Positions 1 to 64,000 of a DNA stretch of 64,000 bases are shown piece after piece (the stretch's first letter is position 1; each line of letters starts with the position of its first letter). The translations under genes were made by a program, and so were the position numbers. This DNA is from Macrostomum lignano. Lineage: Eukaryota. The notes under the pieces are model-generated. The model did not search any database. It was not told where the DNA came from and worked only from the letters and a program-made list of their open reading frames with translations. The stretch spans positions 434,001 to 498,000 of the forward strand of contig NIVC01000201.1 of NCBI GenBank assembly GCA_002269645.1. The letters are read 5' to 3'.

Positions 1-174
1 CGGCCAGGCGGGCCTCCAGCTCGCGCAGCTGCCGTTCTACGCCGGACAGCTTCGTGCGCAGGTCGAACTGCGTCGCAGGATCGTCGGCGGCGGCTTCGCA
101 CAGTCGTCGGCAGAGGTCGCGCGCCTGCGACAGGTCCGACCGGAACGACGCCAGCTCCTCGTCTGTTGGCCGGC
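1..174 (-). CDS. DST/MACF1: Exon (partial, runs off the left edge): spectrin repeat
   Basis: EELASFRSDLSQARDLCRRLCEAAADDPATQFDLRTKLSGVERQLRELEARL. Acceptor tccgcag|GC at 174; an in-frame alternative exists at 162. Confidence 0.82.
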
Positions 175-9100: not shown

Positions 9101-12100
9101 TCAGAGAGGAATTATTAATACATTTGAAAACAACACAGAAATAGCTGAAAAGCCGGAAATGCCAATGAGAAAGCCAGAGTGGAAGTCGAGTTTGGCCAAT
9201 CGAACTCAGCAAGCGCGGGCAGCAATAGAGGGTTCGCTAAATAATTAAAGCACCATGCCAAACCACAAAAAGCACAACAAATTCACGAAAGCTAAAAGCT
9301 ACAAAAGCCATAAGAAAAGCGACAGCACTTAGTAATTACGACACCAAAGAATCTTACCGAACTCTCCAGTGACACGTATTGCAGAATATCAGAATACGAG
9401 CACTCAACGATTTGACCAAATCCGGACACCAACCCGAGCTCAGAGTGTTACCAGAGAAGGATGAAGTCAGGGAGCGGGAGTCCAAAGGTGAACGTAGAAA
9501 ACTTTGAGAAGTATTGCCTACATTGCTTGGATCAAAAGAGCTCGAACCTCCGATCGCCTCAGCTGAAGATATACTTAGGGAGGAGGGGCGTCTTACAACT
9601 GCACCAGATTGCAGGCCTAGTGGACTGGATTCCAATCGCAACTCCTCAGCCTCCTTAAAAGCTTCCTGTAAATTCTTATCACACTGCTCAGCCGTTCCGT
9701 TGCTTTCCTGGTCTGCGCGCAGCTTGAGCTCTTTGGCTTCGGGCTTCAGCTGCTCTTTTTGCTCCTCTGACAGACGTGATTCGGCGGCCGGTTCCTGTTT
9801 TGCAGTTAATCTCTCAGTCTTTGTGTTCTCTGGTACTGGTTGATTTGGTTCCTGCAATTGTACAGCCAATACGCGGGTTTCAGATTCGACAACCACTGTC
9901 GTTTCCGAACCCTGAGGGCCTGCGCTGAGTTTCTCTTTACTCTCAGTGGCGGTATCGGTTGTGACCTTCGACGGCACGGATGTCGTATCAGCATCCTCAC
10001 TAAGCCTATGCTCTGCATTGTCAATTTTAGGCTGTTCCCGATCGACTAATTCCGTTGGCTTTGAGGATTCAAAGCCTAATGCCTCAGAAGGCTGAGCAGC
10101 CTCTTCTAGCTTTGGCGCTGCAGCGATTTTCTGGTCGCGCGCAGCTCAAGCTCTTTGGTTTCGCTCTTCAGCTGCTCTTGTCGCTCTTCTGACGGACGCG
10201 ACTCGGCGGCCTCCACCTCTGTAAGAGACACCTCGTCCTTGACCTCAGCCTGCCCAGCAGCCCCTTCTGGCTTCGATACTGCACCGCTTTCCTGGTCTGC
10301 GCGCAGCTCGAGCTCTTTGGCTTCGGGCTTCAGCTGCTCTTGTTGCTCTTCTGACGGATGCGACCCGGCGGCCTCCGCCTCTGTTGGAGCCACATCATCC
10401 TTGACCTCAGCCTGCTTAGCAGCCTCTTCTGGCTTCAGTACTGCACCGCTTTCCTGGTCTGCGCGCAGCTCGAGCTCTTTGGCTTCGGGCTTCAGCTGCT
10501 CTTGTCGCTCTTCTGACGGACGCGACTCGGCGGCTTGCGCGTCTGTTGGAGCCACCTCATCCTTGACCTCAGCCTGCTTAGCAGCCCCTTCTGGCTTCGA
10601 TACTGCACCGCTTTCCTGGTCTGCGCGCAGCTCGAGCTCTTTGGCTTCGGGCTTCAGCTGCTCTTGTCGCTCTTCTGACAGACGCGACTCGGCGGCTTGC
10701 GCGTCTGTTGGAGCCACCTCATCCTTGACCTCAGTCTTTTCGGCAGCCTCTTCAGGCTTCAGAGCTTCTCGACTCACCCGATCTGCACGCAGCTCGAGCT
10801 CTTTGTCTTCAGGCTTCAGCTGCTCTTGTCGCTCTTCTGACGGACGCGACTCGGCGGCTTGCGCGTCTGTTGGAGCCACCTCATCCTTGACCTCAGTCTT
10901 TTCGGCAGCCTCTTCAGCCTTCAGAGCTTCTCGACTCTCCCGATCTGCACGCAGCTCGAGCTCTTTGGCTTCGGGCTTCAGCTGCTCTTGTTGCTTTTCC
11001 GACGGACGCGACTCGGCGGCTTGCGCGTCTGTTGGAGCCACCTCGTCCCTGACCTCAGCCTGCTTAACAGCCTCTTCAGGCTTTGGTGCTTCTCGGCTCT
11101 CCTGATCTGCTTGCAGCTCGAGCTCTTTGGCTTCGGGCTTCAGCTGCTCTTGTCGCTCTTCTGACGGATGCGACCCGGCGGCCTCCGCCTCTGTTGGAGC
11201 CACATCATCCTTGACCTCAGCCTGCTTAGCAGCCTCTTCTGGCTTCAGTACTGCACCGCTTTCCTGGTCTGCGCGCAGCTCGAGCTCTTTGGCTTCGGGC
11301 TTCAGCTGCTCTTGTCGCTCTTCTGACGGACGCGACTCGGCGGCTTGCGCGTCTGTTGGAGCCACCTCATCCTTGACCTCAGCCTGCTTAGCAGCCCCTT
11401 CTGGCTTCGATACTGCACCGCTTTCCTGGTCTGCGCGCAGCTCGAGCTCTTTGGCTTCGGGCTTCAGCTGCTCTTGTCGCTCTTCTGACAGACGCGACTC
11501 GGCGGCTTGCGCGTCTGTTGGAGCCACCTCATCCTTGACCTCAGTCTTTTCGGCAGCCTCTTCAGCCTTCAGAGCTTCTCGACTCTCCCGATCTGCACGC
11601 AGCTCGAGCTCTTTGGCTTCGGGCTTCAGCTGCTCTTGTTGCTTTTCCGACGGACGCGACTCGGCGGCTTGCGCGTCTGTTGGAGCCACCTCGTCCCTGA
11701 CCTCAGCCTGCTTAACAGCCTCTTCAGGCTTTGGTGCTTCTCGGCTCTCCTGATCTGCTTGCAGCTCGAGCTCTTTGGCTTCGGGCTTCAGCTGCTCTTG
11801 TCGCTCTTCTGACGGATGCGACCCGGCGGCCTCCGCCTCTGTTGGAGCCACATCATCCTTGACCTCAGCCTGCTTAGCAGCCTCTTCTGGCTTCAGTACT
11901 GCACCGCTTTCCTGGTCTGCGCGCAGCTCGAGCTCTTTGGCTTCGGGCTTCAGTTGCTCTTGTCGCTCTTCTGACGGGCGCGACTCGGCGGCCTCCGCCT
12001 CTGTTGGAGCCACATCATCCTTGACCTCAGCCTGCTTAGCAGCCTCTTCTGGCTTCGGTACTGCACCGCTTTCCTGGTCTGCGCGCAGCTCGAGCTCTTT

Positions 12101-15100
12101 GGCTTCGGGCTTCAGCTGCTCTTGTCGCTCTTCTGACGGATGCGACCCGGCGGCCTCCGCCTCTGTTGGAGCCACATCATCCTTGACCTCAGCCTGCTTA
12201 GCAGCCTCTTCTGGCTTCAGTACTGCACCGCTTTCCTGGTCTGCGCGCAGCTCGAGCTTTTTGTCTTCAGGCTTCAGCTGCTCTTGTTGCTCCTCTGACA
12301 GACGTGATTCGGCGGCCGGTTCCTGTTTTGCAGTTAATCCCTCAGTCTTTGTGTTCTCTGGTACTGGGTGACTTGGTTCCTGCAATTGTACAGCCAATAC
12401 GCGGGTTTCAGATTCGACAACCACTGTCGTTTCCGAACCCTGAGGGCCTGCGCTGAGTTTCTCTTTACTCTCAGTGGCGGTATCGGTTGTGACCTTCGAC
12501 GGCACGGATGTCGTATCAGCATCCTCACTAAGCCTATGCTCTGCATTGTCAATTTTAGGCTGTTCCCGATCGACTAATTCCGTTGGCTTTGAGGATTCAA
12601 AGCCTAATGCCTCAGAAGGCTGAGCAGCCTCTTCTAGCTTTGGCGCTGCAGCGATTTTCTGGTCCGCGCGCAGCTCAAGCTCTTTGGCTTCGGGCTTTAG
12701 CTGCTCTTGTTGCTTTTCCGACGGACGCGACTCGGCGGCCTCCGCCTCTGTTGGAGCCACATCATCCTTGACCTCAGCCTGCTTAGCAGCCTCTTCTGGC
12801 TTCGATACTGCACCGCTTTCCTGGTCTGCGCGCAGCTCGAGCTCTTTGGCTTCGGGCTTCAGCTGCTCTTGTCGCTCTTCTGACGGACGCGACTCGGCGG
12901 CTTGCGCGTCTGTTGGAGCCACCTCATCCTTGACCTCAGCCTGCTTAGCAGCCCCTTCTGGCTTCGATACTGCACCGCTTTCCTGGTCTGCGCGCAGCTC
13001 GAGCTCTTTGGCTTCGGGCTTCAGCTGCTCTTGTCGCTCTTCTGACGGACGCGACTCGGCGGCTTGCGCGTCTGTTGGAGCCACCTCATCCTTGACCTCA
13101 GTCTTTTCGGCAGCCTCTTCAGGCTTCAGAGCTTCTCGACTCTCCCGATCTGCACGCAGCTCGAGCTCTTTGTCTTCAGGCTTCAGCTGCTCTTGTCGCT
13201 CTTCTGACGGAAGCGACTCGGCGGCTTGCGCGTCTGTTGGAGCCACCTCGTCCCTGACCTCAGCCTGCTTAACAGCCTCTTCAAGCTCTGGTGCTTCTCG
13301 GCTCTCCTGATCTGCTTGCAGCTCGAGCTCTTTGGCTTCGGGCTTCAGCTGCTCTTGTCGCTCTTCTGACGGATGCGACCCGGCGGCCTCCGCCTCTGTT
13401 GGAGCCACATCATCCTTGACCTCAGCCTGCTTAGCAGCCTCTTCTGGCTTCGGTACTGCACCGCTTTCCTGGTCTGCACGCAGCTCGAGCTCTTTGGCTT
13501 CGGCTTCAGCTGCTCTTGTTGCTCCTCTGACAGACGTGATTCGGCGGCCGGTTCCTGTTTTGCAGTTAATCCCTCAGTCTTTGTGTTCTCTGGTACTGCT
13601 TGACTTGGTTCCTGCAATTGTACAGCCAATACGCGGGTTTCAGATTCGACAACCACTGTCGTTTCCGAACCCTGAGGGCCTGCGCTGAGTTTCTCTTTAC
13701 TCTCAGTGGCGGTATCGGTTGTGACCTTCGACGGCACGGATGTCGTATCAGCATCCTCACTAAGCCTATGCTCTGCATTGTCAATTTTAGGCTGTTCCCG
13801 ATCGACTAATTCCGTTGGCTTTGAGGATTCAAAGCCTAATGCCTCAGAAGGCTGAGCAGCCTCTTCTAGCTTTGGCGCTGCAGCGATTTTCTGGTCGCGC
13901 GCAGCTCAAGCTCTTTGGCTTCGGGCTTCAGCTGCTCTTGTCGCTCTTCTGACGGACGCGACTCGGCGGCTTGCGCGTCTGTTGGAGCCACCTCATCCTT
14001 GACCTCAGCCTGCTTAGCAGCCCTTCTGGCTTCGATACTGCACCGCTTTCCTGGTCTGCGCGCAGCTCGAGCTCTTTGGCTTCGGGCTTCAGCTGCTCTT
14101 GTCGCTCTTCTGACGGACGCGACTCGGCGGCTTGCGCGTCTGTTGGAGCCACCTCATCCTTGACCTCAGCCTGCTTAGCAGCCCCTTCTGGCTTCGATAC
14201 TGCACCGCTTTCCTGGTCTGCGCGCAGCTCGAGCTCTTTGGCTTCGGGCTTCAGCTGCTCTTGTCGCTCTTCTGACGGACGCGACTCGGCGGCTTGCGCG
14301 TCTGTTGGAGCCACCTCATCCTTGACCTCAGCCTGCTTAGCAGCCCTTCTGGCTTCGATTCTCACCGCTTTCCTGGTCTGCGCGCAGCTCGAGCTCTTTG
14401 GCTTCGGGCTTCAGCTGCTCTTGTCGCTCTTTCTGACGGACGCGACTCGGCGGCTTGCGCGTCTGTTGGAGCCACCTCATCCTTGACCTCAGTCTTTTCG
14501 GCAGCCTCTTCAGGCTTCGGAGCTTCTCGACTCTCCTGATCTGCTTGCAGCTCAAGCTCTTTGGCTTCGGGCTTCAGCTGCTCTTGTTGCTTTTCCGACG
14601 GACGCGACTCGGCGGCTTGCGCGTCTGTTGGAGCCACCTCATCCCTGACCTCAGTCTTTTCGGCAGCCTCTTCAGGCTTCAGGAGCTTCTCGACTCTCCC
14701 GATCTGCACGCAGCTCGAGCTCTTTGGCTTCGGGCTTCAGCTGCTCTTGTCGCTCTTCTGACGGGCGCGACTCGGCGGCTTGCGCGTCTGTTGGAGCCAC
14801 CTCATCCTTGACCTCAGTCTTTCGGCAGCCTCTTCAGGCTTCAGAGCTTCTCGACTCTCCCGATCTGCACGCAGCTCGAGCTCTTTGGCTTCGGGCTTCA
14901 GCTGCTCTTGTTGCTTTTCCGACGGGCGCGACTCGGCGGCTTGCGCGTCTGTTGGAGCCACCTCGTCCCTGACCTCAGTCTTCTCGGCAGCCTCTTCAGG
15001 CTTCGAGCTTCTCGACTCTCCCGATCTGCACGCAGCTCGAGCTCTTTGGCTTCGGGCTTCAGCTGCTCTTGTCGCTCTTCTGACGACGCGACTCGGCTGC

Positions 15101-18100
15101 CTCCGCCTCTGTTGGAGCCACCACGTTCTTTACTTCAGCCTGCTTAGCAGCCCTTCTGGCTTCGATACTGCGCTTCCTGGTCTGCGCGCAGCTCGAGCTC
15201 TTTGGCTTCGGGCTTCAGCTGCTCTTGTCGCTCTTCTGACAGACGCGACTCGGAAGCTTGCGCGTCTGTTGGAGCCACGTCTCCTTGACCTCAGTCCTTT
15301 CGGCAGCCTCTTCAGGCTTCGGAGCTTCTCGACTCTCCTGATCTGCTTGCAGCTCAGCTCTTTGGCTTCGGGCTTCAGCTGCTCTTGTTGCTTTTGACGG
15401 ACGCGACTCGGCGGCTTGCGCGTCTGTTGGAGCCACCTCGTCCCTGACCTCAGTCTTTTCGGCAGCCTCTTCAGGCTTCGGAGCTTCTCGACTCTCCTGA
15501 TCTGCACGCAGCTCGAGCTCTTTGGCTTCGGGCTTCAGCTGCTCTTGTCGCTCTTCTGACGGGCGCGACCGGCGGCTTGCGCGTCTGTTGGAGCCACCTC
15601 ATCCTTGACCTCAGCCTGCTTAGCAGCCCCTTCTGGCTTCGATACTGCACCGCTTTCCTGGTCTGCGCGCAGCTCGAGCTCTTTGGCTTCGGGCTTCAGC
15701 TGCTCTTGTCGCTCTTCTGACGGGCGCGACTCGGCTGCCTCCGCCTCTGTTGGAGCCACCACGTTCTTTACTTCAGCCTGCTTAGCAGCCCCTTCTGGCT
15801 TCGATACTGCACCGCTTTCCTGGTCTGCGCGCAGCTCGAGCTCTTTGGCTTCGGGCTTCAGCTGCTCTTGTCGCTCTTCTGACAGACGCGACTCGGCGGC
15901 TTGCGCGTCTGTTGGAGCCACCTCATCCTTGACCTCAGTCTTTTCGGCAGCCTCTTCAGGCTTCAGAGCTTCTCGACTCTCCCGATCTGCACGCAGCTTG
16001 AGCTCTTTGGCTTCGGGCTTCAGCTGCTCTTGTTGCTTTTCCGACGGACGCGACTCGGCGGCTTGCGCGTCTGTTGGAGCCACCTCATCCTTGACCTCAG
16101 TCTTTTCGGCAGCCTCTTCAGGCTTCGGAGCTTCTCGGCTCTCCTGATCTGCTTGCAGCTCAAGCTCTTTGGCTTCGGGCTTCAGCTGCTCTTGTTGCTT
16201 TCTCCGACGGACGCGACTCGGCGGCTTGCGCGTCTGTTGGAGCCACCTCGTCCCTGACCTCAGTCTTCTCGGCAGCCTCTTCAGGCTTCGGAGCTTCTCG
16301 ACTCTCCCGATCTGCACGCAGCTCGAGCTCTTTGGCTTCGGGCTTCAGCTGCTCTTGTCGCTCTTCTGACGGACGCGACTCGGCGGCTTGCGCGTCTGTT
16401 GGAGCCACCTCATCCTTGACCTCAGCCTGCTTAGCAGCCCCTTCTGGCTTCGGTACTGACCGCTTTCCTGGTCTGCGCGCAGCTCGAGCTCTTTGGCTTC
16501 GGGCTTCAGCTGCTCTTGTCGCTCTTCTGACGGACGCGACTCGGCGGCTTGCGCGTCTGTTGGAGCCACCTCATCCTTGACCTCAGTCTTTTCAGCCTCT
16601 TCAGGCTTCAGAGCTTCTCGACTCTCCCGATCTGCACGCAGCTCGAGCTCTTTGGCTTCGGGCTTCAGCTGCTCTTGTTGCTTTTCCGACGGACGCGACT
16701 CGGCGGCTTGCGCGTCTGTTGGAGCCACCTCGTCCCTGACCTCAGCCTGCTTAACAGCCTCTTCAGGCTTTGGTGCTCTCGGCTCTCCTGATCTGCTTGC
16801 AGCTCGAGCTCTTTGCTTCGGCTTCAGCTGCTCCTGTTGCTCTTCTGACGGATGCGTCCGCCTCTGTTGGAGCCACATCATCCTTGACCTCAGCCTGCTT
16901 AGCAGCCTCTTCTGGCTTCAGTACTGCACCGCTTTCCTGGTCTGCTCGCAGCTCGAGCTCTTTGGCTTCGGGCTTCAGCTGCTCTTGTCGCTCTTCTGAC
17001 GGGCGCGACTCGGCGGCCTCCGCCTCTGTTGGAGCCACATCATCCTTGACCTCAGCCTGCTTAGCAGCCTCTTCTGGCTTCGGTACTGCACCGCTTTCCT
17101 GGTCTGCACGCAGCTCGAGCTCTTTGGCTTCGGGCTTCAGCTGCTCTTGTTGCTCCTCTGACAGACGTGATTCGGCGGCCGGTTCCTGTTTTGCAGTTAA
17201 TCCCTCAGTCTTTGTGTTCTCTGGTACTGCTTGACTTGGTTCCTGCAATTGTACAGCCAATACGCGGGTTTCAGATTCGACAACCACTGTCGTTTCCGAA
17301 CCCTGAGGGCCTGCGCTGAGTTTCTCTTTACTCTCAGTGGCGGTATCGGTTGTGACCTTCGACGGCACGGATGTCGTATCAGCATCCTCACTAAGCCTAT
17401 GCTCTGCATTGTCAATTTTAGGCTGTTCCGATCGACTAATTCCGTTGGCTTTGAGGATTCAAAGCCTAATGCCTCAGAAGGCTGAGCAGCCTCTTCTAGC
17501 TTTGGCGCTGCAGCGATTTTCTGGTCCGCGCGCAGCTCAAGCTCTTTGGCTTCGGGCTTCAGCTGCTCTTGTCGCTCTTCTGACGGACGCGACTCGGCGG
17601 CTTGCGCGTCTGTTGGAGCCACCTCATCCTTGACCTCAGCCTGCTTAGCAGCCCCTTCTGGCTTCGATACTGCACCGCTTTCCTGGTCTGCGCGCAGCTC
17701 GAGCTCTTTGGCTTCGGGCTTCAGCTGCTCTTGTCGCTCTTCTGACGGACGCGACTCGGCGGCTTGCGCGTCTGTTGGAGCCACCTCATCCTTGACCTCA
17801 GCCTGCTTAGCAGCCCCTTCTGGCTTCGATACTGCACCGCTTTCCTGGTCTGCGCGCAGCTCGAGCTCTTTGGCTTCGGGCTTCAGCTGCTCTTGTCGCT
17901 CTTCTGACGGACGCGACTCGGCGGCTTGCGCGTCTGTTGGAGCCACCTCATCCTTGACCTCAGTCTTTTCGGCAGCCTCTTCAGGCTTCGGAGCTTCTCG
18001 GCTCTCCTGATCTGCTTGCAGCTCAAGCTCTTTGGCTTCGGGCTTCAGCTGCTCTTGTTGCTTTTCCGACGGACGCGACTCGGCGGCTTGCGCGTCTGTT

Positions 18101-33100: not shown

Positions 33101-36100
33101 TCTCCCGATCTGCACGCAGCTCGAGCTCTTTGGCCTCGGGCTTCAGCTGCTCTTGTCGCTCTTCTGACGGACGCGACTCGGCGGCTTGCGCGTCTGTTGG
33201 AGCCACCTCGTCCCTGACCTCAGTCTTTTCGGCAGCCTCTTCAGGCTTCGGAGCTTCTCGACTCTCCTGATCTGCTTGCAGCTCAAGCTCTTTGGCTTCG
33301 GGCTTTAGCTGCTCTTGTTGCTTTTCCGACGGACGCGACTCGGCGGCTTGCGCGTCTGTTGGAGCCACCTCGTCCCTGACCTCAGCCTGCTTAACAGCCT
33401 CTTCAGGCTTTGGTGCTTCTCGACTCTCCCGATCTGCACGCAGCTCGAGCTCTTTGGCTTCGGGCTTCAGCTGCTCTTGTCGCTCTGCTGACGGGCGCGA
33501 CTCGGCGGCCTCCGCCTCTGTCGGAGCCACCTCGTACTTTACTTCAGCCTGCTTAGCAGCCCCTTCTGGCTTCGATACTGCACCGCTTTCCTGGTCTGCG
33601 CGCAGCTCGAGCTCTTTGGCTTCGGGCTTCAGCTGCTCTTGTCGCTCTTCTGACGGACGCGACTCGGCGGCTTGCGCGTCTGTTGGAGCCACCTCATCCT
33701 TGACCTCAGTCTTTTCGGCAGCCTCTTCAGGCTTCAGAGCTTCTCGACACTCCCGATCTGCACGCAGCTCGAGCTCTTTGTCTTCAGGCTTCAGCTGCTC
33801 TTGTCGCTCTTCTGACGGAAGCGACTCGGCGGCTTGCGCGTCTGTTGGAGCCACCTCGTCCCTGACCTCAGCCTGCTTAACAGCCTCTTCAGGCTTTGGT
33901 GCTTCTCGGCTCTCCTGATCTGCTTGCAGCTCGAGCTCTTTGGCTTCGGGCTTCAGCTGCTCTTGTCGCTCTTCTGACGGATGCGACCCGGCGGCCTCCG
34001 CCTCTGTTGGAGCCACATCATCCTTGACCTCAGCCTGCTTAGCAGCCTCTTCTGGCTTCAGTACTGCACCGCTTTCCTGGTCTGCGCGCAGCTCGAGCTC
34101 TTTGGCTTCGGGCTTCAGCTGCTCTTGTCGCTCTTCTGACGGGCGTGACTCGGCGGCCTCCGCCTCTGTTGGAGCCACCTCATCCTTGACCTCAGCCTGC
34201 TTAGCAGCCCCTTCTGGCTTCGATACTGCACCGCTTTCCTGGTCTGCTCGCAGCTCGAGCTCTTTGGCTTCGGGCTTCAGCTGCTCTTGTCGCTCTTCTG
34301 ACGGACGCGACTCGGCGGCTTGCGCGTCTGTTGGAGCCATCTCGTCCCTGACCTCAGCCTGCTTAACAGCCTCTTCAGGCTTTGGTGCTTCTCGGCTCTC
34401 CTGATCTGCTTGCAGCTCGAGCTCTTTGGCTTCGGGCTTCAGCTGCTCTTGTTGCTCTTCTGACGGATGCGACCCGGCGGCCTCCGCCTCTGTTGGAGCC
34501 ACATCATCCTTGACCTCAGCCTGCTTAGCAGCCTCTTCTGGCTTCAGTACTGCACCGCTTTCCTGGTCTGCGCGCAGCTCAAGCTCTTTGGCTTCGGGCT
34601 TCAGCTGCTCTTGTCGCTCTTCTGACGGACGCGACTCGGCGGCTTGCGCGTCTGTTGGAGCCACCTCATCCTTGTCCTCAGTCCTTTCGGCAGCCTCTTC
34701 AGGCTTCAGAGCTTCTCGACTCTCCCGATCTGCACGCAGCTCGAGCTCTTTGGCTTCAGGCTTCAGCTGCTCTTGTCGCTCTTCTGACGGACGCGACTCG
34801 GCGGCTTGCGCGTCTGTTGGAGCCACCTCGTCCCTGACCGCAGCCTGCTTAACAGCCTCTTCAGGCTTTGGTGCTTCTCGGCTCTCCTGATCTGCTTGCA
34901 GCTCGAGCTCTTTGGCTTCGGGCTTCAGCTGCTCTTGTTGCTCTTCTGACGGATGCGACCCGGCGGCCTCCGCCTCTGTTGGAGCCACATCATCCTTGAC
35001 CTCAGCCTGCTTAGCAGCCTCTTCTGGCTTCGGTACTGCACCGCTTTCCTGGTCTGCGCGCAGCTTGAGCTCTTTGGCTTCGGGCTTCAGCTGCTCTTTT
35101 TGCTCCTCTGACAGACGTGATTCGGCGGCCGGTTCCTGTTTTGCAGTTAATCTCTCAGTCTTTGTGTTCTCTGGTACTGGTTGATTTGGTTCCTGCAATT
35201 GTACAGCCAATACGCGGGTTTCAGATTCGACAACCACTGTCGTTTCCGAACCCTGAGGGCCTGCGCTGAGTTTCTCTTTACTCTCAGTGGCGGTATCGAT
35301 TGTGACCTTCGACGGCACGGATGTCGTATCAGCATCCTCACTAAGCCTATGCTCTGCATTTTCAATTTTAGGCTGTTCCCAATCGACTAATTCCGTTGGC
35401 TTTGAGGATTCAAAGCCTAATGCCTCAGAAGGCTGAGCAGCCTCTTCTAGCTTTGGCGCTGCAGCGATTTTCTGGTCCGCGCGCAGCTCAAGCTCTTTGG
35501 TTTCGCGCTTCAGCTCCTCTTGTCGCTCTTCTGACGGACGCGACTCGGCGGCCTCCGCCTCTGTTGGAGCCACATCATCCTTGACCTCAGCCTGCTTAGC
35601 AGCCTCTTCTGGCTTCAGTACTGCACCGCTTTCCTGGTCTGCGCGCAGCTCGAGCTCTTTGGCTTCGGGCTTCAGCTGCTCTTGTCGCTCTTCTGACGGG
35701 CGCAACTCGGCGGCTTGCGCGTCTGTTGGAGCCACCTCATCCTTGTCCTCAGTCCTTTCGGCAGCCTCTTCAGGCTTCAGAGCTTCTCGACTCTCCCGAT
35801 CTGCACGCAGCTCGAGCTCTTTGGCTTCAGGCTTCAGCTGCTCTTGTCGCTCTTCTGATGGGCGCGACTCGGCGGCCTCCGCCTCTGTTGGAGCCACCTC
35901 GTCCTTTACTTCAGCCTGCTTAGCAGCCCCTTCTGGCTTCGATACTGCACCGCTTTCCTGGTCTGCGCGCAGCTCGAGCTCTTTGGCTTCGGGCTTCAGC
36001 TGCTCTTGTCGCTCTTCTGACGGGCGTGACTCGGCGGCCTCCGCCTCTGTTGGAGCCACCTCATCCTTGACCTCAGCCTGCTTAGCAGCCCCTTCTGGCT

Positions 36101-39100
36101 TCGATACTGCACCGCTTTCCTGGTCTGCTCGCAGCTCGAGCTCTTTGGCTTCGGGCTTCAGCTGCTCTTGTCGCTCTTCTGACGGACGCGACTCGGCGGC
36201 TTGCGCGTCTGTTGGAGCCATCTCGTCCCTGACCTCAGCCTGCTTAACAGCCTCTTCAGGCTTTGGTGCTTCTCGGCTCTCCTGATCTGCTTGCAGCTCG
36301 AGCTCTTTGGCTTCGGGCTTCAGCTGCTCTTGTTGCTCTTCTGACGGATGCGACCCGGCGGCCTCCGCCTCTGTTGGAGCCACATCATCCTTGACCTCAG
36401 CCTGCTTAGCAGCCTCTTCTGGCTTCAGTACTGCACCGCTTTCCTGGTCTGCGCGCAGCTCGAGCTCTTTGGCTTCGGGCTTCAGTTGCTCTTGTCGCTC
36501 TTCTGACGGATGCGACCCGGCGGCCTCCGCCTCTGTTGGAGCCACATCATCCTTGACCTCAGCCTGCTTAGCAGCCTCTTCTGGCTTCAGTACTGCACCG
36601 CTTTCCTGGTCTGCGCGCAGCTCGAGCTCTTTGGCTTCGGGCTTCAGTTGCTCTTGTCGCTCTTCTGACGGGCGCAACTCGGCGGCTTGCGCGTCTGTTG
36701 GAGCCACCTCATCCTTGTCCTCAGTCCTTTCGGCAGCCTCTTCAGGCTTCAGAGCTTCTCGACTCTCCCGATCTGCACGCAGCTCGAGCTCTTTGGCTTC
36801 AGGCTTCAGCTGCTCTTGTCGCTCTTCTGACGGACGCGACTCGGCGGCTTGCGCGTCTGTTGGAGCCACCTCGTCCCTGACCCCAGCCTGCTTAACAGCC
36901 TCTTCAGGCTTTGGTGCTTCTCGGCTCTCCTGATCTGCTTGCAGCTCGAGCTCTTTGGCTTCGGGCTTCAGCTGCTCTTGTTGCTCTTCTGACGGATGCG
37001 ACCCGGCGGCCTCCGCCTCTGTTGGAGCCACATCATCCTTGACCTCAGCCTGCTTAGCAGCCTCTTCTGGCTTCGGTACTGCACCGCTTTCCTGGTCTGC
37101 GCGCAGCTTGAGCTCTTTGGCTTCGGGCTTAAGCTGCTCTTTTTGCTCCTCTGACAGACGTGATTCGGCGGCCGGTTCCTGTTTTGCAGTTAATCTCTCA
37201 GTCTTTGTGTTCTCTGGTACTGGTTGATTTGGTTCCTGCAATTGTACAGCCAATACGCGGGTTTCAGATTCGACAACCACTGTCGTTTCCGAACCCTGAG
37301 GGCCTGCGCTGAGTTTCTCTTTACTCTCAGTGGCGGTATCGATTGTGACCTTCGACGGCACGGATGTCGTATCAGCATCCTCACTAAGCCTATGCTCTGC
37401 ATTTTCAATTTTAGGCTGTTCCCAATCGACTAATTCCGTTGGCTTTGAGGATTCAAAGCCTAATGCCTCAGAAGGCTGAGCAGCCTCTTCTAGCTTTGGC
37501 GCTGCAGCGATTTTCTGGTCCGCGCGCAGCTCAAGCTCTTTGGTTTCGCGCTTCAGCTCCTCTTGTCGCTCTTCTGACGGACGCGACTCGGCGGCTCCAC
37601 CTCTGTTAGAGACACCTCGTCCTTGACCTCAGCCTGCCTAGCAGCCCCTTCTGGCTTCGATACTGCACCGCTTTCCTGGTCTGCGCGCAGCTCGAGCTCT
37701 TTGGCTTCGGGCTTCAGCTGCTCTTGTCGCTCTTCTGACGGACGCGACTCGGCGGCTTGCGCGTCTGTTGGAGCCACCTCATCCTTAACTTCGTCCTTCA
37801 GCCTGCTTAACAGCCTCTTCAGGCTTTGGTGCTTCTCGACTCTCCCGATCTGCACGCAGCTCGAGCTCTTTGGCTTCGGGCTTCAGCTGCTCTTGTCGCT
37901 CTGCTGACGGACGCGACTCGGCGGCCTCCGCCTCTGTCGGAGCCACCTCGTACTTTACTTCAGCCTGCTTAGCAGCCCTTCTGGCTTCGATACTGCACCG
38001 CTTTCCTGATCTGCGCGCAGCTCGAGCTCTTTGGCTTCGGGCTTCAGCTGCTCTTGTCGCTCTTCTGACGGACGCGACTCGGCGGCTTGCGCGTCTGTTG
38101 GAGCCACCTCATCCTTGACCTCAGTCTTTTCGGCAGCCTCTTCAGGCTTCAGAGCTTCTCGACACTCCCGATCTGCACGCAGCTCGAGCTCTTTGTCTTC
38201 AGGCTTCAGCTGCTCTTGTCGCTCTTCTGACGGAAGCGACTCGGCGGCTTGCGCGTCTGTTGGAGCCACCTCGTCCCTGACCTCAGCCTGCTTAACAGCC
38301 TCTTCAGGCTTTGGTGCTTCTCGCTCTCCTGATCTGCTTGCAGCTCGAGCTCTTTGGCTTCGGGCTTCAGCTGCTCTTGTCGCTCTTCTGACGGATGCGA
38401 CCGGCGGCCTCCGCCTCTGTTGGAGCCACATCATCCTTGACCTCAGCCTGCTTAGCAGCCTCTTCTGGCTTCAGTACTGCACCGCTTTCCTGGTCTGCGC
38501 GCAGCTCGAGCTCTTTGGCTTCGGGCTTCAGCTGCTCTTGTCGCTCTTCTGACGGGCGCAACTCGGCGGCTTGCGCGTCTGTTGGAGCCACCTCATCCTT
38601 GTCCTCAGTCCTTTCGGCAGCCTCTTCAGGCTTCAGAGCTTCTCGACTCTCCCGATCTGCACGCAGCTCGAGCTCTTTGGCTTCAGGCTTCAGCTGCTCT
38701 TGTCGCTCTTCTGATGGGCGCGACTCGGCGGCCTCCGCCTCTGTTGGAGCCACCTCGTCCTTTACTTCAGCCTGCTTAGCAGCCCTTCTGGCTTCGATAC
38801 TGCACCGCTTTCCTGGTCTGCGCGCAGCTCGAGCTCTTTGGCTTCGGGCTTCAGCTGCTCTTGTCGCTCTTCTGACGGGCGTGACTCGGCGGCCTCCGCC
38901 TCTGTTGGAGCCACCTCATCCTTGACCTCAGCCTGCTTAGCAGCCCTTCTGGCTTCGATACTGCACCGCTTTCCTGGTCTGCTCGCAGCTCGAGCTCTTT
39001 GGCTTCGGGCTTCAGCTGCTCTTGTCGCTCTTCTGACGGACGCGACTCGGCGGCTTGCGCGTCTGTTGGAGCCATCTCGTCCCTGACCTCAGCCTGCTTA

Positions 39101-42100
39101 ACAGCCTCTTCAGGCTTTGGTGCTTCTCGCTCTCCTGATCTGCTTGCAGCTCGAGCTCTTTGGCTTCGGGCTTCAGCTGCTCTTGTTGCTCTTCTGACGG
39201 ATGCGACCGGCGGCCTCCGCCTCTGTTGGAGCCACATCATCCTTGACCTCAGCCTGCTTAGCAGCCTCTTCTGGCTTCAGTACTGTACCGCTTTCCTGGT
39301 CTGCGCGCAGCTCGAGCTCTTTGGCTTCGGGCTTCAGTTGCTCTTGTCGCTCTTCTGACGGGCGCAACTCGGCGGCTTGCGCGTCTGTTGGAGCCACCTC
39401 ATCCTTGTCCTCAGTCCTTTCGGAAGCCTCTTCAGGCTTCAGAGCTTCTCGACTCTCCCGATCTGCACGCAGCTCGAGCTCTTTGGCTTCAGGCTTCAGC
39501 TGCTCTTGTCGCTCTTCTGACGGACGCGACTCGGCGGCTTGCGCGTCTGTTGGAGCCACCTCGTCCCTGACCTCAGCCTGCTTAACAGCCTCTTCAGGCT
39601 TTGGTGCTTCTCGGCTCTCCTGATCTGCTTGCAGCTCGAGCTCTTTGGCTTCGGGCTTCAGCTGCTCTTGTCGCTCTTCTGACGGATGCGACCCGGCGGC
39701 CTCCGCCTCTGTTGGAGCCACATCATCCTTGACCTCAGCCTGCTTAGCAGCCTCTTCTGGCTTCGGTACTGCACCGCTTTCCTGGTCTGCGCGCAGCTTG
39801 AGCTCTTTGGCTTCGGGCTTCAGCTGCTCTTTTTGCTCCTCTGACAGACGTGATTCGGCGGCCGGTTCCTGTTTTGCAGTTAATCTCTCAGTCTTTGTGT
39901 TCTCTGGTACTGGTTGATTTGGTTCCTGCAATTGTACAGCCAATACGCGGGTTTCAGATTCGACAACCACTGTCGTTTCCGAACCCTGAGGGCCTGCGCT
40001 GAGTTTCTCTTTACTCTCAGTGGCGGTATCGATTGTGACCTTCGACGGCACGGATGTCGTATCAGCATCCTCACTAAGCCTATGCTCTGCATTTTCAATT
40101 TTAGGCTGTTCCCAATCGACTAATTCCGTTGGCTTTGAGGATTCAAAGCCTAATGCCTCAGAAGGCTGAGCAGCCTCTTCTAGCTTTGGCGCTGCAGCGA
40201 TTTTCTGGTCCGCGCGCAGCTCAAGCTCTTTGGTTTCGCGCTTCAGCTCCTCTTGTCGCTCTTCTGACGGACGCGACTCGGCGGCCTCCACCTCTGTTAG
40301 AGACACCTCGTCCTTGACCTCAGCCTGCCCAGCAGCCCCTTCTGGCTTCGATACTGCACCGCTTTCCTGGTCTGCGCGCAGCTCGAGCTCTTTGGCTTCG
40401 GGCTTCAGCTGCTCTTGTCGCTCTTCTGACGGGCGCAACTCGGCGGCTTGCGCGTCTGTTGGAGCCACCTCATCCTTAACTTCAGTCCTTTCGGAAGCCT
40501 CTTCAGGCTTCAGAGCTTCTCGACTCTCCCGATCTGCACGCAGCTCGAGCTCTTTGGCTTCGGGCTTCAGCTGCTCTTGTCGCTCTTCTGACGGGCGCGA
40601 CTCGGCGGCCTCCGCCTCTGTTGGAGCCACCTCGTCCTTTACTTCAGCCTGCTTAGCAGCCCCTTCTGGCTTCGATACTGCACCGCTTTCCTGGTCTGCG
40701 CGCAGCTCGAGCTCTTTGGCTTCGGGCTTCAGCTGCTCTTGTCGCTCTTCTGACGGACGCGACTCCGCGGCTTGCGCGTCTGTTGGAGCCACCTCATCCC
40801 TGACCTCAGCCTGCTTAACAGCCTCTTCAGGCTTCGGAGCTTCTCGGCTCTCCTTATCTGCACGCAGCTCGAGCTCTTTGGCTTCAGGCTTCAGCTGCTC
40901 TTGTCGCTCTTCTGACGGGCGCGACTCGGCGGCCTCCGCCTCTGTTGGAGACACCTCGTCCTTTACTTCAGCCTGCTTAGCAGCCCCTTCTGGCTTCGAT
41001 ACTGCACCGCTTTCCTGGTCTGCGCGCAGCTCGAGCTCTTTGGCTTCGGGCTTCAGCTGCTCTTGTCGCTCTTCTGACGGACGCGACTCCGCGGCTTGCG
41101 CGTCTGTTGGAGCCACCTCATCCCTGACCTCAGCCTGCTTAACAGCCTCTTCAGGCTTCGGAGCTTCTCGGCTCTCCTTATCTGCACGCAGCTCGAGCTC
41201 TTTGGCTTCCGGGTTCAGCTGCTCTTGTCGCTCTTCTGACGGGCGCGACTCGGCGGCCTCCGCCTCTGTTGGAGACACCTCGTGATGTTTTATTGGCTTC
41301 AATTGTACAGCTAAAACCAAAGTCTCTGAATAGGTCACAGTGGCTGGTTGATTGTCTTTATCGGTTTCTATATTATTTTTTTCAGAAGTACGAATGAGTG
41401 ACGGTGAGGAAAGGAATGATTTGGAGGTTGGCGTTGGTGGATTGGGAGCCTGGATTTGGTCAGTTCGCCGTGACGTACTTTTCTGAGAATACTGCTGGTC
41501 ACTGTAGTCAGAGATACTTTGTACTGGCTGTTTGAATGGAAGCAAATTGTTTGGTTTGAAAAATTAGGCAAAGGTGAGTCGTAATACAAGTAAGCACTAG
41601 TGTTACGCTTTTTAGTTAGCAGTTTTTTACAATAGTAAGTGGAACTCATTGTAATTGTTAAGAAGCTATTAACAGTTAAAGTTATTCTAGATTTTAGAAC
41701 ACACCAATGTTTTTTTACAAACCTGGGTGCTGAATCCAACGGGAAATTGACCTGGATCCAGTTTTTGACCGTGAAACTCGTGGCTTGCGTGACTCAAATG
41801 CTGGATAGCTAAACTACTGAGACTATTCTGTTCCATGGATGCGGCTGACATCCGCCTAACTGTTTGACTATATGCACGATCGTCAGTGTCTAAACTGCCG
41901 CCTTTCGTATCGGTGTCTTTGCTAATACTGACCCCGGCATCGCCATCTGAGGCCGATGGTGAAGTCTGATTGGAATTTCGATTGTCAAGCTTCTTGGCAC
42001 CACTGGAATCTGCAGCTGCTTCAGGAACTCCAGTTTTATCTGCAAAGTGGTATTTAGGCATTTTGTATTAGATACTGATAGTCACAGACCAATACTGAAA

Positions 42101-62499: not shown

Positions 62500-62656
62500 C
62501 TGGCGGGCAAGAGAGGCGTCTCAATTTTCTATTCTGCTTGAGTAAAAACCATCCGGAGAAAAAATCTAACGATTTAGCCGGAATAAACAAAACTTTGTGA
62601 TAATTAAGAACAAAATTTCTTTTAACGTCCATTTCTAAAGATGCAAAATATCAAAG

Positions 62657-64000
62657 CTGCAGATAACATGGTGTCCCTACACTGCCAATCCTGAGCATCT
62701 GCAGATAACATGGTGTCCCTACACTGCCAATCCTGAGCAGCTGCAGATATCATGGTGTCCCTACACTACCAATCCTGAGCAGCTGCAGATATCATGGTGT
62801 CCCTACACTGCCAATCCTGAGCAGCTGCAGATATCATGGTGTCCCTACACTGCCAATCCTGAGCATCTGCAGATATCATGGTGTCCCTACACTGCCAATC
62901 CTGAGCAGCTGCAGATATCATGGTGTCCCTACACTGCCAATCCTGAGCAGCTGCAGATATCATGGTGTCCCTACACTGCCAATCCTGAGCAGCTGCAGAT
63001 ATCTCAGGTGTCCCTACACTGCCAATCCTGAGCATCTGCAGATATCATGGTGTCCCTACACTGCCAATCCTGAGCAGCTGCAGATATCTCAGGTGTCCCT
63101 ACACTGCCAATCCTGAGCAGCTGCAGATATCTCAGGTGTCCCTACACTGCCAATCCTGAGCATCTGCAGATAACATGGTGTCCCTACACTGCCAATCCTG
63201 AGCAGCTGCAGATATCTGAGGTGTCCCTACACTGCCAATCCTGAGCAGCTGCAGATATCTCAGGTGTCCCTACACTGCCAATCCTGAGCAGCTGCAGATA
63301 ACATGGTGTCCCTACACTGCCAATCCTGAGCAGCTGCAGATATCTATCATGGTGTCCCTACACTGCCAATCCTGAGCAGCTGCAGATATCTCAGGTGTCC
63401 CTACACTGCCAATCCTGAGCATCTGCAGATATCATGGTGTCCCTACACTGCCAATCCTGAGCAGCTGCAGATATCTATCATGGTGTCCCTACACTGCCAA
63501 TCCTGAGCAGCTGCAGATATCTCAGGTGTCCCTACACTGCCAATCCTGAGCATCTGCAGATATCATGGTGTCCCTACACTGCCAATCCTGAGCAGCTGCA
63601 GATATCTCAGGTGTCCCTACACTGCCAATCCTGAGCAGCTGCAGATATCATGGTGTCCCTACACTGCCAATCCTGAGCAGCTGCAGATATCTCAGGTGTC
63701 CCTACACTGCCAATCCTGAGCAGCTGCAGATATCTCAGGTGTCCCTACACTGCCAATCCTGAGCAGCTGCAGATATCTCAGGTGTCCCTACACTGCCAAT
63801 CCTGAGCAGCTGCAGATATCTCAGGTGTCCCTACACTGCCAATCCTGAGCAGCTGCAGATATCTCAGGTGTCCCTACACTGCCAATCCTGAGCAGCTGCA
63901 GATAACATGGTGTCCCTACACTGCCAATCCTGAGCAGCTGCAGATATCTATCATGGTGTCCCTACACTGCCAATCCTGAGCAGCTGCAGATATCTCAGGT
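62657..64000. repeat. Intronic minisatellite, 42-46 bp unit (ctgcagatatcatggtgtccctacactgccaatcctgagcag), runs off the right edge
   Basis: About 31 copies with atcatgg/atctcagg/aacatgg/atctatcatgg variants. Confidence 0.95.

What the first reader, a model, noticed from the sequence alone, without database searches (positions are those of the whole stretch)
9358..41527. Apparent 32 kb single coding exon: about 10,700 aa of a 54-aa acidic, PEVK-like repeat inside a spectraplakin
Seen: a phase-0 acceptor at 41527, a donor at 9357, and about 165 copies of a 54-aa unit in between with no intron-like sequence. A representative unit has 11 E, 3 D, 10 A, 8 K+R, 5 Q and 4 P, no aromatics or Cys, and net charge about -6. 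Established: vertebrate BPAG1b/MACF1b and fly Shot have large central exons, and titin PEVK is an entropic spring. As I recall, the largest human coding exons (TTN about 17 kb, MUC16 about 22 kb) are shorter than this. Inference: a largely disordered spacer of about 4 micrometre contour length (10,700 aa x about 0.38 nm) between the actin/plakin head and the spectrin rod. That would make it a titin-like elastic spectraplakin. I do not recognise this unit from any known spectraplakin.
Basis: partly seen in the sequence, partly recalled or inferred. Interest (0 to 1): 0.9.

Follow-up and report, generated by a model that had tools for sequence, protein, structure and literature searches.

The report
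Giant acidic repeat exon, flatworm spectraplakin
A flatworm (Macrostomum lignano) cytoskeletal linker gene carries a roughly 32 kb block of about 177 copies of a 54-amino-acid acidic repeat that looks like real coding sequence. The copy in this window is riddled with sequencing-type frameshifts, and its expression and function are still unproven.

Summary
The array is real. It lies on the minus strand at 41527-9358, with about 177 units of 162 nt (54 aa) and 11 in-frame 87-codon spacer modules. It sits between plectin-repeat exons and spectrin-repeat exons of a Macrostomum lignano gene (Mlig_3_7, scaffold NIVC01000201.1).

It is not one open reading frame as assembled. There are 79 indels and 49 frame switches, and the longest open stretch is 2745 aa. 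Of the indels, 70 are deletions, 73 are 1 nt long, and 82% of the 1-nt events lie in homopolymers. No unit carries a substitution-derived stop. A second assembled copy (NIVC01000790.1), 98.7% identical, stays open for 2734 aa and restores an in-frame junction at the 9357 donor. The breaks are therefore most likely PacBio consensus errors.

Unit variation shows pN/pS of 0.41 in the coding frame only. A profile search of 1.84 billion proteins found the unit only in M. lignano.

The sequence is predicted to be mostly disordered, with one short helix per unit. It is PEVK-like in composition only.

The best reading is a lineage-specific, optional (phase 0-0) giant cassette exon that encodes an acidic spacer. 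Expression, inclusion, true copy number and elasticity are all untested.

The parts
9358..41527 (-). Giant tandem-repeat exon as assembled (32,170 nt). It holds about 177 units of 54 aa, 11 spacer modules, a head and a tail. Restoring every unit to 162 nt gives about 32,247 nt, or about 10,749 codons (estimate).
41207..41527 (-). Head of the exon: 107 codons, unique and related to the second half of the spacer module (ETLVLAVQLKP). The acceptor cag|CCA at 41527 is in phase 0. A UniProt model uses an alternative in-frame acceptor at about 41293.
29394..37628 (-). Longest uninterrupted open stretch of the array in the window (2745 aa, including 3 spacers).
14003..24322 (-). Three copies of a super-repeat with a period of about 3.5 kb (21 units plus a spacer), 96-98% identical. 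It lies inside the larger of the two zones dense in frameshifts (about 13.9-27.0 kb; the other is about 37.7-39.3 kb).
39812..40234 (-). Interval containing a spacer module (one unit plus 87 non-repeat codons). The other ten are at 37122-37544, 35079-35501, 29796-30218, 28564-28986, 27493-27915, 20787-21209, 17129-17550, 13499-13919, 12266-12688 and 9738-10159.
9358..9737 (-). Unique Ser-rich tail of the exon, ending at the donor G|GTAAGA. The window lacks one G of a G4 run at 9435. With that G, as in the second copy, the exon ends ...ILQYVSLESS in phase 0.
8751..9357 (-). Inferred intron (607 nt, 43% GC) between the array exon and the first downstream exon.
8607..8750 (-). Next exon (VDAKKYADDLLTDLERELAKL...MLEEHQ), starting in phase 0. 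Its frame is confirmed by the annotated protein P0003, which begins at the internal Met.
1094..7457 (-). Downstream GC-rich exons of the spectrin-repeat rod, separated by introns that contain satellites.
41528..41722 (-). Intron upstream of the array (195 nt, 30% GC).
41723..42040 (-). Exon just upstream of the array (…KTGVPEAAADSS…GFSTQ). It ends in phase 0 and is present in UniProt A0A1I8GYN2.
42054..43634 (-). Unique acidic, Ser-rich region between the plectin repeats and the array. It has no Pfam match.
44010..48872 (-). Plectin/plakin-repeat region: 50-aa modules carrying 26 DPxTG-type motifs. It includes a 300-nt higher-order repeat of 8.6 copies at 98% identity (44310-46880).
53725..55548 (-). 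Further upstream coding sequence containing plectin repeats.
59400..60531 (-). Candidate plakin-domain exon. The matches to the Spectrin_4 family and to the plectin plakin domain are weak.
61055..61366 (-). Exon whose start aligns with the C-terminal end of the CH2 domain of actin-binding domains (alpha-actinin-2, plectin, MACF1).

Best explanation
The window is part of Macrostomum lignano scaffold NIVC01000201.1. It carries the central part of a spectraplakin-type gene on the minus strand.

Region 41527-9358 is a lineage-specific, protein-coding tandem-repeat exon. It has about 177 units of 54 aa, interrupted by 11 spacer modules of 87 codons, for about 10,750 codons in all. It lies directly after the plakin-repeat region and before the spectrin rod.

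The roughly 49 frame switches in the window are uncorrected PacBio consensus errors, mainly homopolymer deletions in a repeat that short reads could not polish. They are not biological decay.

Both exon borders are in phase 0. The exon can therefore be included or skipped without changing the frame, like the optional plakin-repeat exon of Drosophila shot.

The encoded segment is a strongly acidic, Pro-punctuated polyampholyte. It is predicted to be mostly disordered, with one helix of about 20 residues per unit. When included, it most likely acts as a very long flexible spacer or entropic tether between the actin- and intermediate-filament-binding head with its plakin repeats and the spectrin rod.

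Shown here: the array, its periodicity, its coding-type constraint, the error signature, the gene context and the restriction to one lineage.

Inferred: splicing into one mRNA, full inclusion, disorder, and the spacer or spring function.
For: Source and assembly method:
- One search identifies GCA_002269645.1, scaffold NIVC01000201.1.
- (PMC5730564) gives the method: PacBio reads, Canu 1.4, Pilon polishing.

Array structure.

Error signature:
- There are 79 indels, of which 70 are deletions and 73 are 1 nt long.
- 82% of the 1-nt events lie in runs of 2 or more bases (baseline 39%), and 44% lie in runs of 3 or more (baseline 8.5%).
- Units with an indel differ by 0-3 substitutions, mostly 0-1, from the nearest intact unit, apart from one unit with 6.
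- No genuine unit has a substitution-derived stop codon.
- The second copy, L002 (NIVC01000790.1), is 98.7% identical to window 25139-19589. It has one frame break in 9.3 kb and a 2734-aa open frame. In 25 of the 28 gaps between the two copies the window is the shorter one.

In-frame junction: L002 has the extra G at window position 9435, so the exon ends ...LESS in phase 0 before VDAKKY....

Coding constraint:
- pN/pS is 0.41 in the ELELR frame and 0.97-1.10 in the other two sense frames.
- Third-position diversity is about twice first-position diversity.

Gene models:
- UniProt A0A1I8GYN2 and A0A1I8GMD7 read from the upstream exons into the array.
- The RNA-seq-based GenBank annotation places several sense-strand CDS fragments inside the array.

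Gene context:
- Plectin repeats score E = 6e-170.
- The downstream continuation P0005 matches the spectrin family at 60.9 bits.
- A CH2 tail is present upstream.

Lineage restriction: a profile of 56 units found only three M. lignano proteins among 1.84 billion representatives.

Disorder:
- Mean hydropathy is 0.355 against a Uversky boundary of 0.46. The fraction of charged residues is 0.42 and net charge per residue is -0.13.
- The AlphaFold2 model has mean pLDDT 54.6, with one helix per unit and coil elsewhere.

Precedent for an optional large exon at this position: the shot exon of 10,497 nt (PMC2173965).
Against: - No reads or transcripts could be examined. The error interpretation, the copy number and the splicing are therefore all indirect.
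- The neighbouring 300-nt plectin higher-order repeat (98% identical copies, 2.6 kb) has no frameshift at all, and neither does 8.2 kb of the array itself. The error rate would have to be very uneven.
- An open frame in a tandem repeat is weak evidence on its own. The antisense mirror frame is also open, with pN/pS of 0.46.
- No database model joins the array to the spectrin exons. P0003 starts at a Met inside the 8750 exon.
- The annotated models within the array are short and carry 'introns' spanning many units. These could be mapping artefacts or real internal splicing.
- The two assembled copies have different block structures: 8, 5 and 10 units between spacers in L002, against 21, 6 and 14 in the window. 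The assembled length is therefore not secure.
- The AlphaFold2 run used no alignment, so low confidence is only weak evidence of disorder.
Confidence: 0.6

Rival explanations
1. The array is coding and transcribed, but the full 10,750-codon exon is rarely or never included. Either it is usually skipped (41723 joined to 8750, which keeps the frame), or only a few units are kept through splicing between repeat units. On this reading the micrometre-scale protein does not exist as such.
For: - Both borders are in phase 0, so skipping keeps the frame.
- The equivalent shot exon is optional.
- The RNA-seq-based GenBank models in the array are short CDS fragments (153-603 aa) that span 9-16 kb with 'introns'.
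- UniProt models disagree on the acceptor, using 41527-type versus 41293.
Against: - Purifying selection acts on all unit types across the array, and there are no nonsense substitutions in about 177 units. That would be hard to maintain if most units were never translated.
- Introns called inside repeats are a typical artefact of mapping short reads (inference).
Confidence: 0.25
2. The array exon ends a plectin/VAB-10A-like isoform (actin-binding domain, plakin domain, plakin repeats, then an acidic tail). It is not joined to the spectrin rod, so it is a C-terminal tail and not an internal spacer.
For: - No model links the array to the 8750 exon. P0003 starts inside that exon.
- If the donor is not used, the frame closes shortly afterwards. 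The window has TAA at 9354-9356, and L002 closes 21 codons later.
- From memory: C. elegans vab-10 makes separate plakin-repeat and spectrin-repeat isoforms.
Against: - A strong GTAAGA donor sits exactly where the corrected frame reaches phase 0. It matches a phase-0 acceptor whose upstream codon is a stop.
- No canonical AATAAA signal was seen in the 600 nt after the donor (by eye).
Confidence: 0.15
3. The copy in this window is a decaying homeolog or haplotype, and its frameshifts are real. The gene is functional only in another copy.
For: - M. lignano DV1 is a hidden polyploid with 180 Mb of duplicated blocks at 95% identity or more.
- A second copy is largely intact where this one is broken.
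- Other repeats in the same window are frameshift-free.
Against: - The ratio of indels to substitutions is 28:45 over 5.5 kb, with a 25:3 bias towards the window being shorter. The indels are concentrated in homopolymers, and there are no nonsense substitutions.
- This is the pattern of PacBio CLR consensus error, not of neutral decay.
- The flanking unique exons are intact.
Confidence: 0.1
4. The assembled length is substantially wrong, either over-expanded or collapsed. The true array differs from 32 kb by more than about 25%.
For: - The array contains 3.5 kb super-repeats at 96-98% identity.
- The second scaffold breaks inside the array and has a different block order.
- The assembly used 2015-era PacBio reads and was described as difficult.
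Against: - The window has no Ns, and the array lies inside a 791 kb scaffold.
- Units are diverged (mean 87% aa identity) and spacers are irregularly placed, which gives long reads something to anchor on.
Confidence: 0.3
5. The array is a non-coding intronic satellite that happens to have an open frame.
For: - Tandem repeats make up 15% of this genome.
- Almost every intron in the window carries a minisatellite.
- Frames on the opposite strand are also partly open.
Against: - The period and the spacers are multiples of three.
- pN/pS is 0.41 in the frame that joins the flanking exons.
- The unique head and tail are in frame, and both ends have splice sites.
- GC content is 59%, like exons, against 30-43% in the adjacent introns.
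- Independent gene models read into the array.
Confidence: 0.04

Closest known systems
Drosophila Short stop (Shot) plakin-repeat exon and the gigantic Shot isoforms; mammalian MACF1b/BPAG1b
   Same: A very large, optional exon sits between the plakin domain and the spectrin rod of a spectraplakin. In shot it is 10,497 nt and gives isoforms of up to 8,846 aa (PMC2173965). The M. lignano gene also has a plakin-repeat region at this position.
   Different: The array here comes in addition to the plakin repeats and is about three times longer. Its 54-aa unit is unrelated to plakin repeats (hhalign probability 0.5%) and to any Pfam family. It is predicted to be disordered, not globular.
Titin PEVK region (PPAK and poly-E motifs)
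   Same: Both are long, proline-punctuated, Glu-rich, low-complexity segments inside a giant cytoskeletal protein. Both suggest an entropic-spring role (the titin side is from established knowledge).
   Different: The unit here is 54 aa, not about 28. P+E+V+K is 44% and Ala is 16%. Pfam gave no hit of any kind, PPAK included. AlphaFold2 predicts one helix per unit. Elasticity has not been tested.
Giant isoform-specific exons of ankyrins (Drosophila Ank2-XL, about 1200 kDa; vertebrate giant ankyrin-G with a 7.8 kb exon)
   Same: A lineage-specific giant exon turns an ordinary cytoskeletal adaptor into a megadalton protein with a long extended region (PMC6703079; PMC12798937).
   Different: The gene family is different and there is no sequence similarity. 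Function is shown by genetics for the ankyrins, and nothing has been shown for this array.
Chironomus Balbiani ring genes and mucin VNTR exons
   Same: Both have protein-coding tandem-repeat exons of tens of kb. The BR genes are about 40 kb long, internally repetitive and have only four introns (PMC4192438). Mucins each have one large VNTR exon (PMC13345508 abstract). Copy number probably varies between alleles, as between the two assembled copies here.
   Different: Those are secreted, glycosylated proteins. This array is an internal segment of an intracellular cytoskeletal cross-linker.

Membership tests
Spectraplakin (Shot / MACF1 / dystonin / VAB-10) | N-terminal actin-binding domain made of two calponin-homology domains | tested here: inconclusive
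   Only one exon (61366-61055) is in the window. Its first 25-65 residues align with the C-terminal end of CH2 in alpha-actinin-2 (E = 0.006), plectin (E = 0.27) and MACF1 (E = 0.39). Pfam gave no hit. The rest of the domain would lie beyond the window.
Spectraplakin (Shot / MACF1 / dystonin / VAB-10) | Plakin domain (spectrin-like repeats with an SH3 insert) | tested here: inconclusive
   The Spectrin_4 match is 16.9-18.2 bits, below the 24.2-bit cutoff. The plectin plakin domain 2odv matches at E = 0.05.
Spectraplakin (Shot / MACF1 / dystonin / VAB-10) | Plakin (plectin) repeats | tested here: met
   PF00681 scores 551 bits (E = 6e-170, 22 stretches) in 44010-48872, and 68 bits in 53725-55548.
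Spectraplakin (Shot / MACF1 / dystonin / VAB-10) | Long spectrin-repeat rod downstream | tested here: met
   The window exons alone are weak (17-19 bits). The M. lignano protein P0005 covers 75% of the concatenated downstream window exons at 82% identity and continues beyond them. It scores 60.9 bits against a 29.9-bit cutoff for PF00435.
Spectraplakin (Shot / MACF1 / dystonin / VAB-10) | C-terminal EF-hands and a GAR (Gas2-related) microtubule-binding domain | not tested
   These would lie outside the window, and no retrieved model reached the 3' end of the gene.
Titin-type PEVK segment | PPAK-type motifs of about 28 residues or poly-E motifs, with P+E+V+K making up most residues | tested here: not met
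   The unit is 54 aa. P+E+V+K is 44%. A 2745-aa stretch of the array had no Pfam hit of any kind.
Titin-type PEVK segment | Intrinsically disordered and entropically elastic | not testable with these tools
   Only predictions are available. The sequence falls below the Uversky boundary, and the AlphaFold2 model has low confidence with one helix per unit.
Protein-coding tandem-repeat (VNTR-type) giant exon | Unit length is a multiple of three, the frame is kept across units, and there is selection at the protein level | tested here: met
   Units are 162 nt and spacer-containing intervals are 423 nt. Open stretches reach 2745 aa in the window and 2734 aa in L002. pN/pS is 0.41. There are no nonsense substitutions. 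In the window the frame is kept overall only if the 79 indels are errors.
Protein-coding tandem-repeat (VNTR-type) giant exon | Transcribed and spliced into mRNA as one exon | not testable with these tools
   The evidence is indirect only: RNA-seq-derived CDS fragments in the GenBank annotation and predicted UniProt models that enter the array.
Degenerate plakin repeat | Profile similarity between the 54-aa unit and the gene's own 50-aa plectin-type modules | tested here: not met
   hhalign of A1 against A2 gives probability 0.5% and E = 0.11 over 10 columns.

The most novel reading that the evidence does not exclude
The exon is intact in vivo and fully included in at least one isoform. That would give a spectraplakin of well over 15,000 residues, with about 1.2 MDa from the repeat alone. 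It would be the largest cytoskeletal cross-linker described. Its lineage-specific acidic tether has a contour length in the micrometre range and works as an entropic spring or spacer coupling actin and intermediate filaments to microtubules in a soft-bodied flatworm.
Probability: 0.25. Interest if true: 0.8.

Novelty: new variant of a known kind. Interest (0 to 1): 0.5.

Why it matters
If the exon is expressed in full, it would roughly double the size record for spectraplakins. Shot reaches 8,846 aa (PMC2173965).

It would also be a natural example of a megadalton disordered tether built into a cytoskeletal cross-linker. M. lignano has RNAi and transgenesis, so the question 'does linker length or elasticity matter for spectraplakin function?' could be tested directly.

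It is also a practical warning. In UniProt and GenBank this gene is split into mis-named fragments, and the long-read assembly carries about 80 frame-breaking errors in this exon. Giant repeat exons like this one are systematically missed by annotation.

If instead the exon is usually skipped, it is an example of a tolerated VNTR expansion in an optional exon of a very repeat-rich genome. That would be of modest interest.

Tried and rejected
- **Homologues of the unit.** A word-index search and an exhaustive HMMER profile search of 1.84 billion representatives returned only M. lignano proteins. A PDB profile search gave nothing meaningful. Pfam gave nothing.
- **Orthologues of the flanking parts in other species.** Searches with the spectrin exons and with the plakin-domain exons returned only M. 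lignano models. Orthology to Shot or MACF1 therefore rests on domain content.
- **PDB searches with single exons** were weak.
- **More genomic copies.** Look-ups for P0002, P0004, P0005 and P0006 found no record.
- **Literature.** No paper in the library mentions Macrostomum together with spectraplakin or plectin.
- **Is the unit a degenerate plakin repeat?** Rejected.
- **Are the frame breaks introns?** Rejected. The breaks are single-base changes inside units that are otherwise intact.
- **A false alarm in my own analysis.** The 33 'stops' are artefacts of forcing spacer sequence onto the unit model. They come as 3 per spacer across 11 spacers, and they are not real nonsense codons.

Full report
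**1. Source**

The 220-aa protein P0001, encoded at window 28011-27352, is a called gene on NCBI GCA_002269645.1, scaffold NIVC01000201.1 (791,733 nt). By arithmetic from those coordinates, the window corresponds to record positions 434001-498000. This is the Macrostomum lignano Mlig_3_7 assembly. It was built from PacBio reads with Canu 1.4 and polished with Pilon using Illumina and RNA-seq reads (PMC5730564). The authors describe a genome in which tandem and simple repeats make up 15%, with about 180 Mb of duplicated blocks at 95% identity or more, because the DV1 line is a hidden polyploid.

**2. The observation**

Tandem Repeats Finder reports a 162-nt period, with 324- and 486-nt higher orders, from about 10.1 to 41.3 kb.

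An anchor search found 176 unit starts. The spacings were 162 nt (112 times), 161 (30), 160 (9), 159 (4), 163 (4) and 421-423 (11), plus a few others. That makes about 177 units.

The 421-423-nt intervals contain an in-frame, non-repeat spacer of 87 extra codons (…KIAAAPKLEEAAQPSEALGFESSKPTELVD…TTVVVESETRVLAVQLQEP…). It occurs 11 times at irregular intervals. The first 107 codons of the exon resemble the second half of this spacer.

The consensus unit has 13 E, 3 D, 10 A, 9 K+R, 5 Q and 5 P, no aromatic residues or Cys, and net charge -7.

Both proposed borders look like real splice sites. At 41527 the sequence is caaacag|CCA, in phase 0 with the exon that ends ACC CAG|gt at 41723. At 9357 it is TTCG|gtaaga.

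**3. The region is not one open frame as assembled**

Six-frame analysis shows that the coding register changes 49 times. The longest open stretches are 2745 aa (37628-29394), 1155, 867 and 796 aa.

I aligned every unit of abnormal length to its nearest intact unit. This gave 79 indel events:
- 70 are deletions and 9 are insertions.
- 73 are 1 nt long.
- 82% of the 1-nt events lie in runs of 2 or more identical bases, against a baseline of 39%.
- 44% lie in runs of 3 or more, against a baseline of 8.5%.
- The affected units differ from an intact unit by 0-3 substitutions, mostly 0-1, apart from one unit with 6.

Read in register, no genuine unit contains a stop codon created by substitution. 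The 33 'stops' listed in that call are an artefact of aligning spacer sequence to the unit.

The frameshifts cluster at about 37.7-39.3 kb and 13.9-27.0 kb. The second zone contains three copies of a super-repeat with a period of about 3.5 kb, 96-98% identical.

**4. A second genomic copy settles most of this**

The downstream protein P0003 is encoded on another scaffold, NIVC01000790.1 (24,048 nt), fetched as L002. Upstream of the spectrin exons, L002 carries the last 9.3 kb of the same array.

That stretch has a single 161-nt unit and an open frame of 2734 aa. It is 98.7% identical to window 25139-19589, which is heavily frameshifted. In 25 of the 28 gaps between them the window is the shorter sequence.

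In the unique tail, L002 has GGGG where the window has GGG (window 9435). With the extra G the exon ends …GFGQIVECSYSDILQYVSLESS in phase 0, directly before the GTAAGA donor. That fits the phase-0 exon VDAKKYADDLLTDLERELAKL… at 8750.

Together with the assembly method, the most economical reading is uncorrected PacBio consensus error in a repeat that short reads cannot polish.

One caveat remains. The error rate would have to be very uneven. 8.2 kb of the array and the neighbouring plectin higher-order repeat (98% identical copies) have no frameshift at all. I put the alternative, a truly decaying homeolog, at about 10%.

**5. Is it coding?**

An open frame in a tandem repeat proves little, and the opposite strand is also partly open. 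The evidence for coding comes from elsewhere:
- Among 87 distinct intact units, pN/pS is 0.41 in the ELELR frame and 0.97-1.10 in the other two sense frames. The antisense frame that shares wobble positions mirrors this at 0.46. Third-position diversity is about twice first-position diversity.
- Unit and spacer lengths are multiples of three.
- The unique head and tail are in frame.
- GC content is 59%, against 30% and 43% in the flanking introns.
- Two UniProt M. lignano models read from upstream exons into the array. A0A1I8GYN2 (P0002) uses an alternative in-frame acceptor at about 41293. A0A1I8GMD7 (P0006), from a diverged copy, links plectin repeats, the unique region and the sequence that follows a 41527-type acceptor.
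- The GenBank annotation was built from StringTie/TACO transcripts and TransDecoder ORFs. It places at least seven sense-strand CDS fragments within 20 kb of the array.

This is indirect evidence of transcription. It does not show that the exon is included whole.

**6. Gene context (5' to 3' on the minus strand)**

- An exon whose start aligns with the C-terminal end of CH2 in alpha-actinin-2, plectin and MACF1 (61366-61055, E = 0.006-0.4).
- Weak plakin-domain matches at 60.5-59.4 kb.
- Plectin repeats at 55.5-53.7 kb and 48.9-44.0 kb (PF00681, 551 bits).
- A unique acidic, Ser-rich region at 43.6-41.7 kb.
- The array.
- GC-rich exons that M. lignano models P0003-P0005 splice into a spectrin-repeat protein. 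The continuation P0005 matches PF00435 at 60.9 bits.

This is the order seen in Shot-type and MACF1b-type isoforms. EF-hand and GAR domains would lie outside the window and were not tested. No database model spans the junction from the array to the spectrin exons.

The upstream exon ends in phase 0 and the downstream exon begins in phase 0. Skipping the array therefore preserves the frame, as with the optional 10,497-nt plakin-repeat exon of shot (PMC2173965).

**7. What the unit is**

- It has no Pfam family and no PDB relative.
- It is not related to the gene's own plectin modules (hhalign probability 0.5%).
- Among 1.84 billion representative proteins, only three M. lignano sequences match a profile of 56 units.
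- Its physical chemistry points to disorder. Mean hydropathy is 0.355 against a Uversky boundary of 0.46, the fraction of charged residues is 0.42, net charge per residue is -0.13, and Pro is 8%.
- AlphaFold2, run without an alignment, gives mean pLDDT 54.6. It predicts one helix of about 20 residues per unit (SEERQEQLKPEAKELELRADQES), and low-confidence coil elsewhere, including the spacer.
- P+E+V+K is 44% and Ala is 16%, so 'PEVK-like' is an analogy of composition and not membership.

**8. Mechanism**

My best-supported account is a lineage-specific cassette exon that inserts a very long, acidic, flexible tether between the filament-binding head with its plakin repeats and the spectrin rod. 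Only the sequence properties are shown. The function is inferred.

The arithmetic is correct. A relaxed disordered chain of this length would be far more compact. Using the denatured-protein scaling Rg of about 0.19 x N^0.6 nm, which I recall from memory, Rg comes to about 50 nm and the end-to-end distance to about 0.1 micrometre.

Rival readings are rare or partial inclusion, a C-terminal tail of a plectin-like isoform, real decay of this copy, a wrong assembled length, and a non-coding satellite. They are listed with their tests in the Rival explanations section.

**9. Size claims**

The two assembled copies differ in block structure. The last blocks have 8, 5 and 10 units between spacers in L002, and 21, 6 and 14 in the window. 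The second scaffold also ends inside the array. Either copy number varies between homeologs or the assembly is uncertain there, so the figure of 32 kb is provisional.

A repeat exon of this size is unusual but not without precedent. The Chironomus Balbiani ring genes are about 40 kb long, internally repetitive, and have only four introns (PMC4192438). Megadalton isoforms made by giant exons are also known for ankyrins.

**10. Verdict**

The array, its unit and its borders are real, and the coding interpretation is well supported. The claim of a single open exon needs the qualification that the window copy carries about 79 probable assembly errors. The spectraplakin context is largely supported.

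The PEVK and elastic-spring reading is a reasonable but untested analogy. No paper in the library links Macrostomum with spectraplakin or plectin. The public models of this gene are fragments with spurious names, so the feature appears to be undescribed.

I rate it a new variant of a known kind, with interest 0.5.

Noticed in passing
window 197-1102, 1520-1653, 2591-2791, 5495-6198, 7545-8391, 49237-49661, 51210-53562, 55621-55850, 56988-57282, 58862-59331, 60610-61077, 61613-62239, 62655-64000: Almost every intron of this gene carries its own distinct minisatellite. Unit sizes are 17-52 nt, with up to 118 copies of a 20-mer at 99% identity (51210-53562). Some of them inflate the mechanical ORF list with spurious ORFs.
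   Followed up: no
window 44310-46880 (minus strand): The plakin-repeat region is itself recently expanded. A 300-nt higher-order unit (two 50-aa plectin-type modules) is present in 8.6 copies at 98% identity, with no frameshift. Older, more diverged 150-nt modules lie at 47851-48647.
   Followed up: partly
window 1-8750 and 53700-61400 compared with 42054-48872: GC content differs strongly between exons of one gene. The spectrin-rod exons are 68-72% GC and Ala-rich. The plectin-repeat and unique exons are 44-48% GC. The array is 59% GC.
   Followed up: no
L002 (NIVC01000790.1) 1-9327 compared with window 9358-25139: A second, near-identical partial copy of the locus ends inside the array and has a different block structure. 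L002 5573-6952 corresponds to window 19589-11668, about 6.5 kb less. This is either copy-number variation between homeologs or an assembly difference.
   Followed up: partly
UniProt A0A1I8GYN2, A0A1I8GMD7, A0A1I8GMD8 (P0002, P0006, P0007): The public M. lignano models of this gene are fragments named 'UCH', 'Glutaredoxin' and 'PH domain-containing protein'. None of those domains is detectable with Pfam. P0006 has only a plectin repeat.
   Followed up: yes
window 43250-42600 (minus strand): Model P0002 skips about 650 nt that lie inside a continuous 516-aa ORF, while P0006 retains the equivalent sequence. This is either an alternative intron inside coding sequence or a prediction artefact.
   Followed up: no
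window 10155-11105, 21908-23230, 40230-41285 (plus strand): Long antisense ORFs (306-440 aa) run through the array, and the antisense mirror frame shows pN/pS of 0.46. This is the expected consequence of shared wobble positions, not evidence of a second gene.
   Followed up: yes
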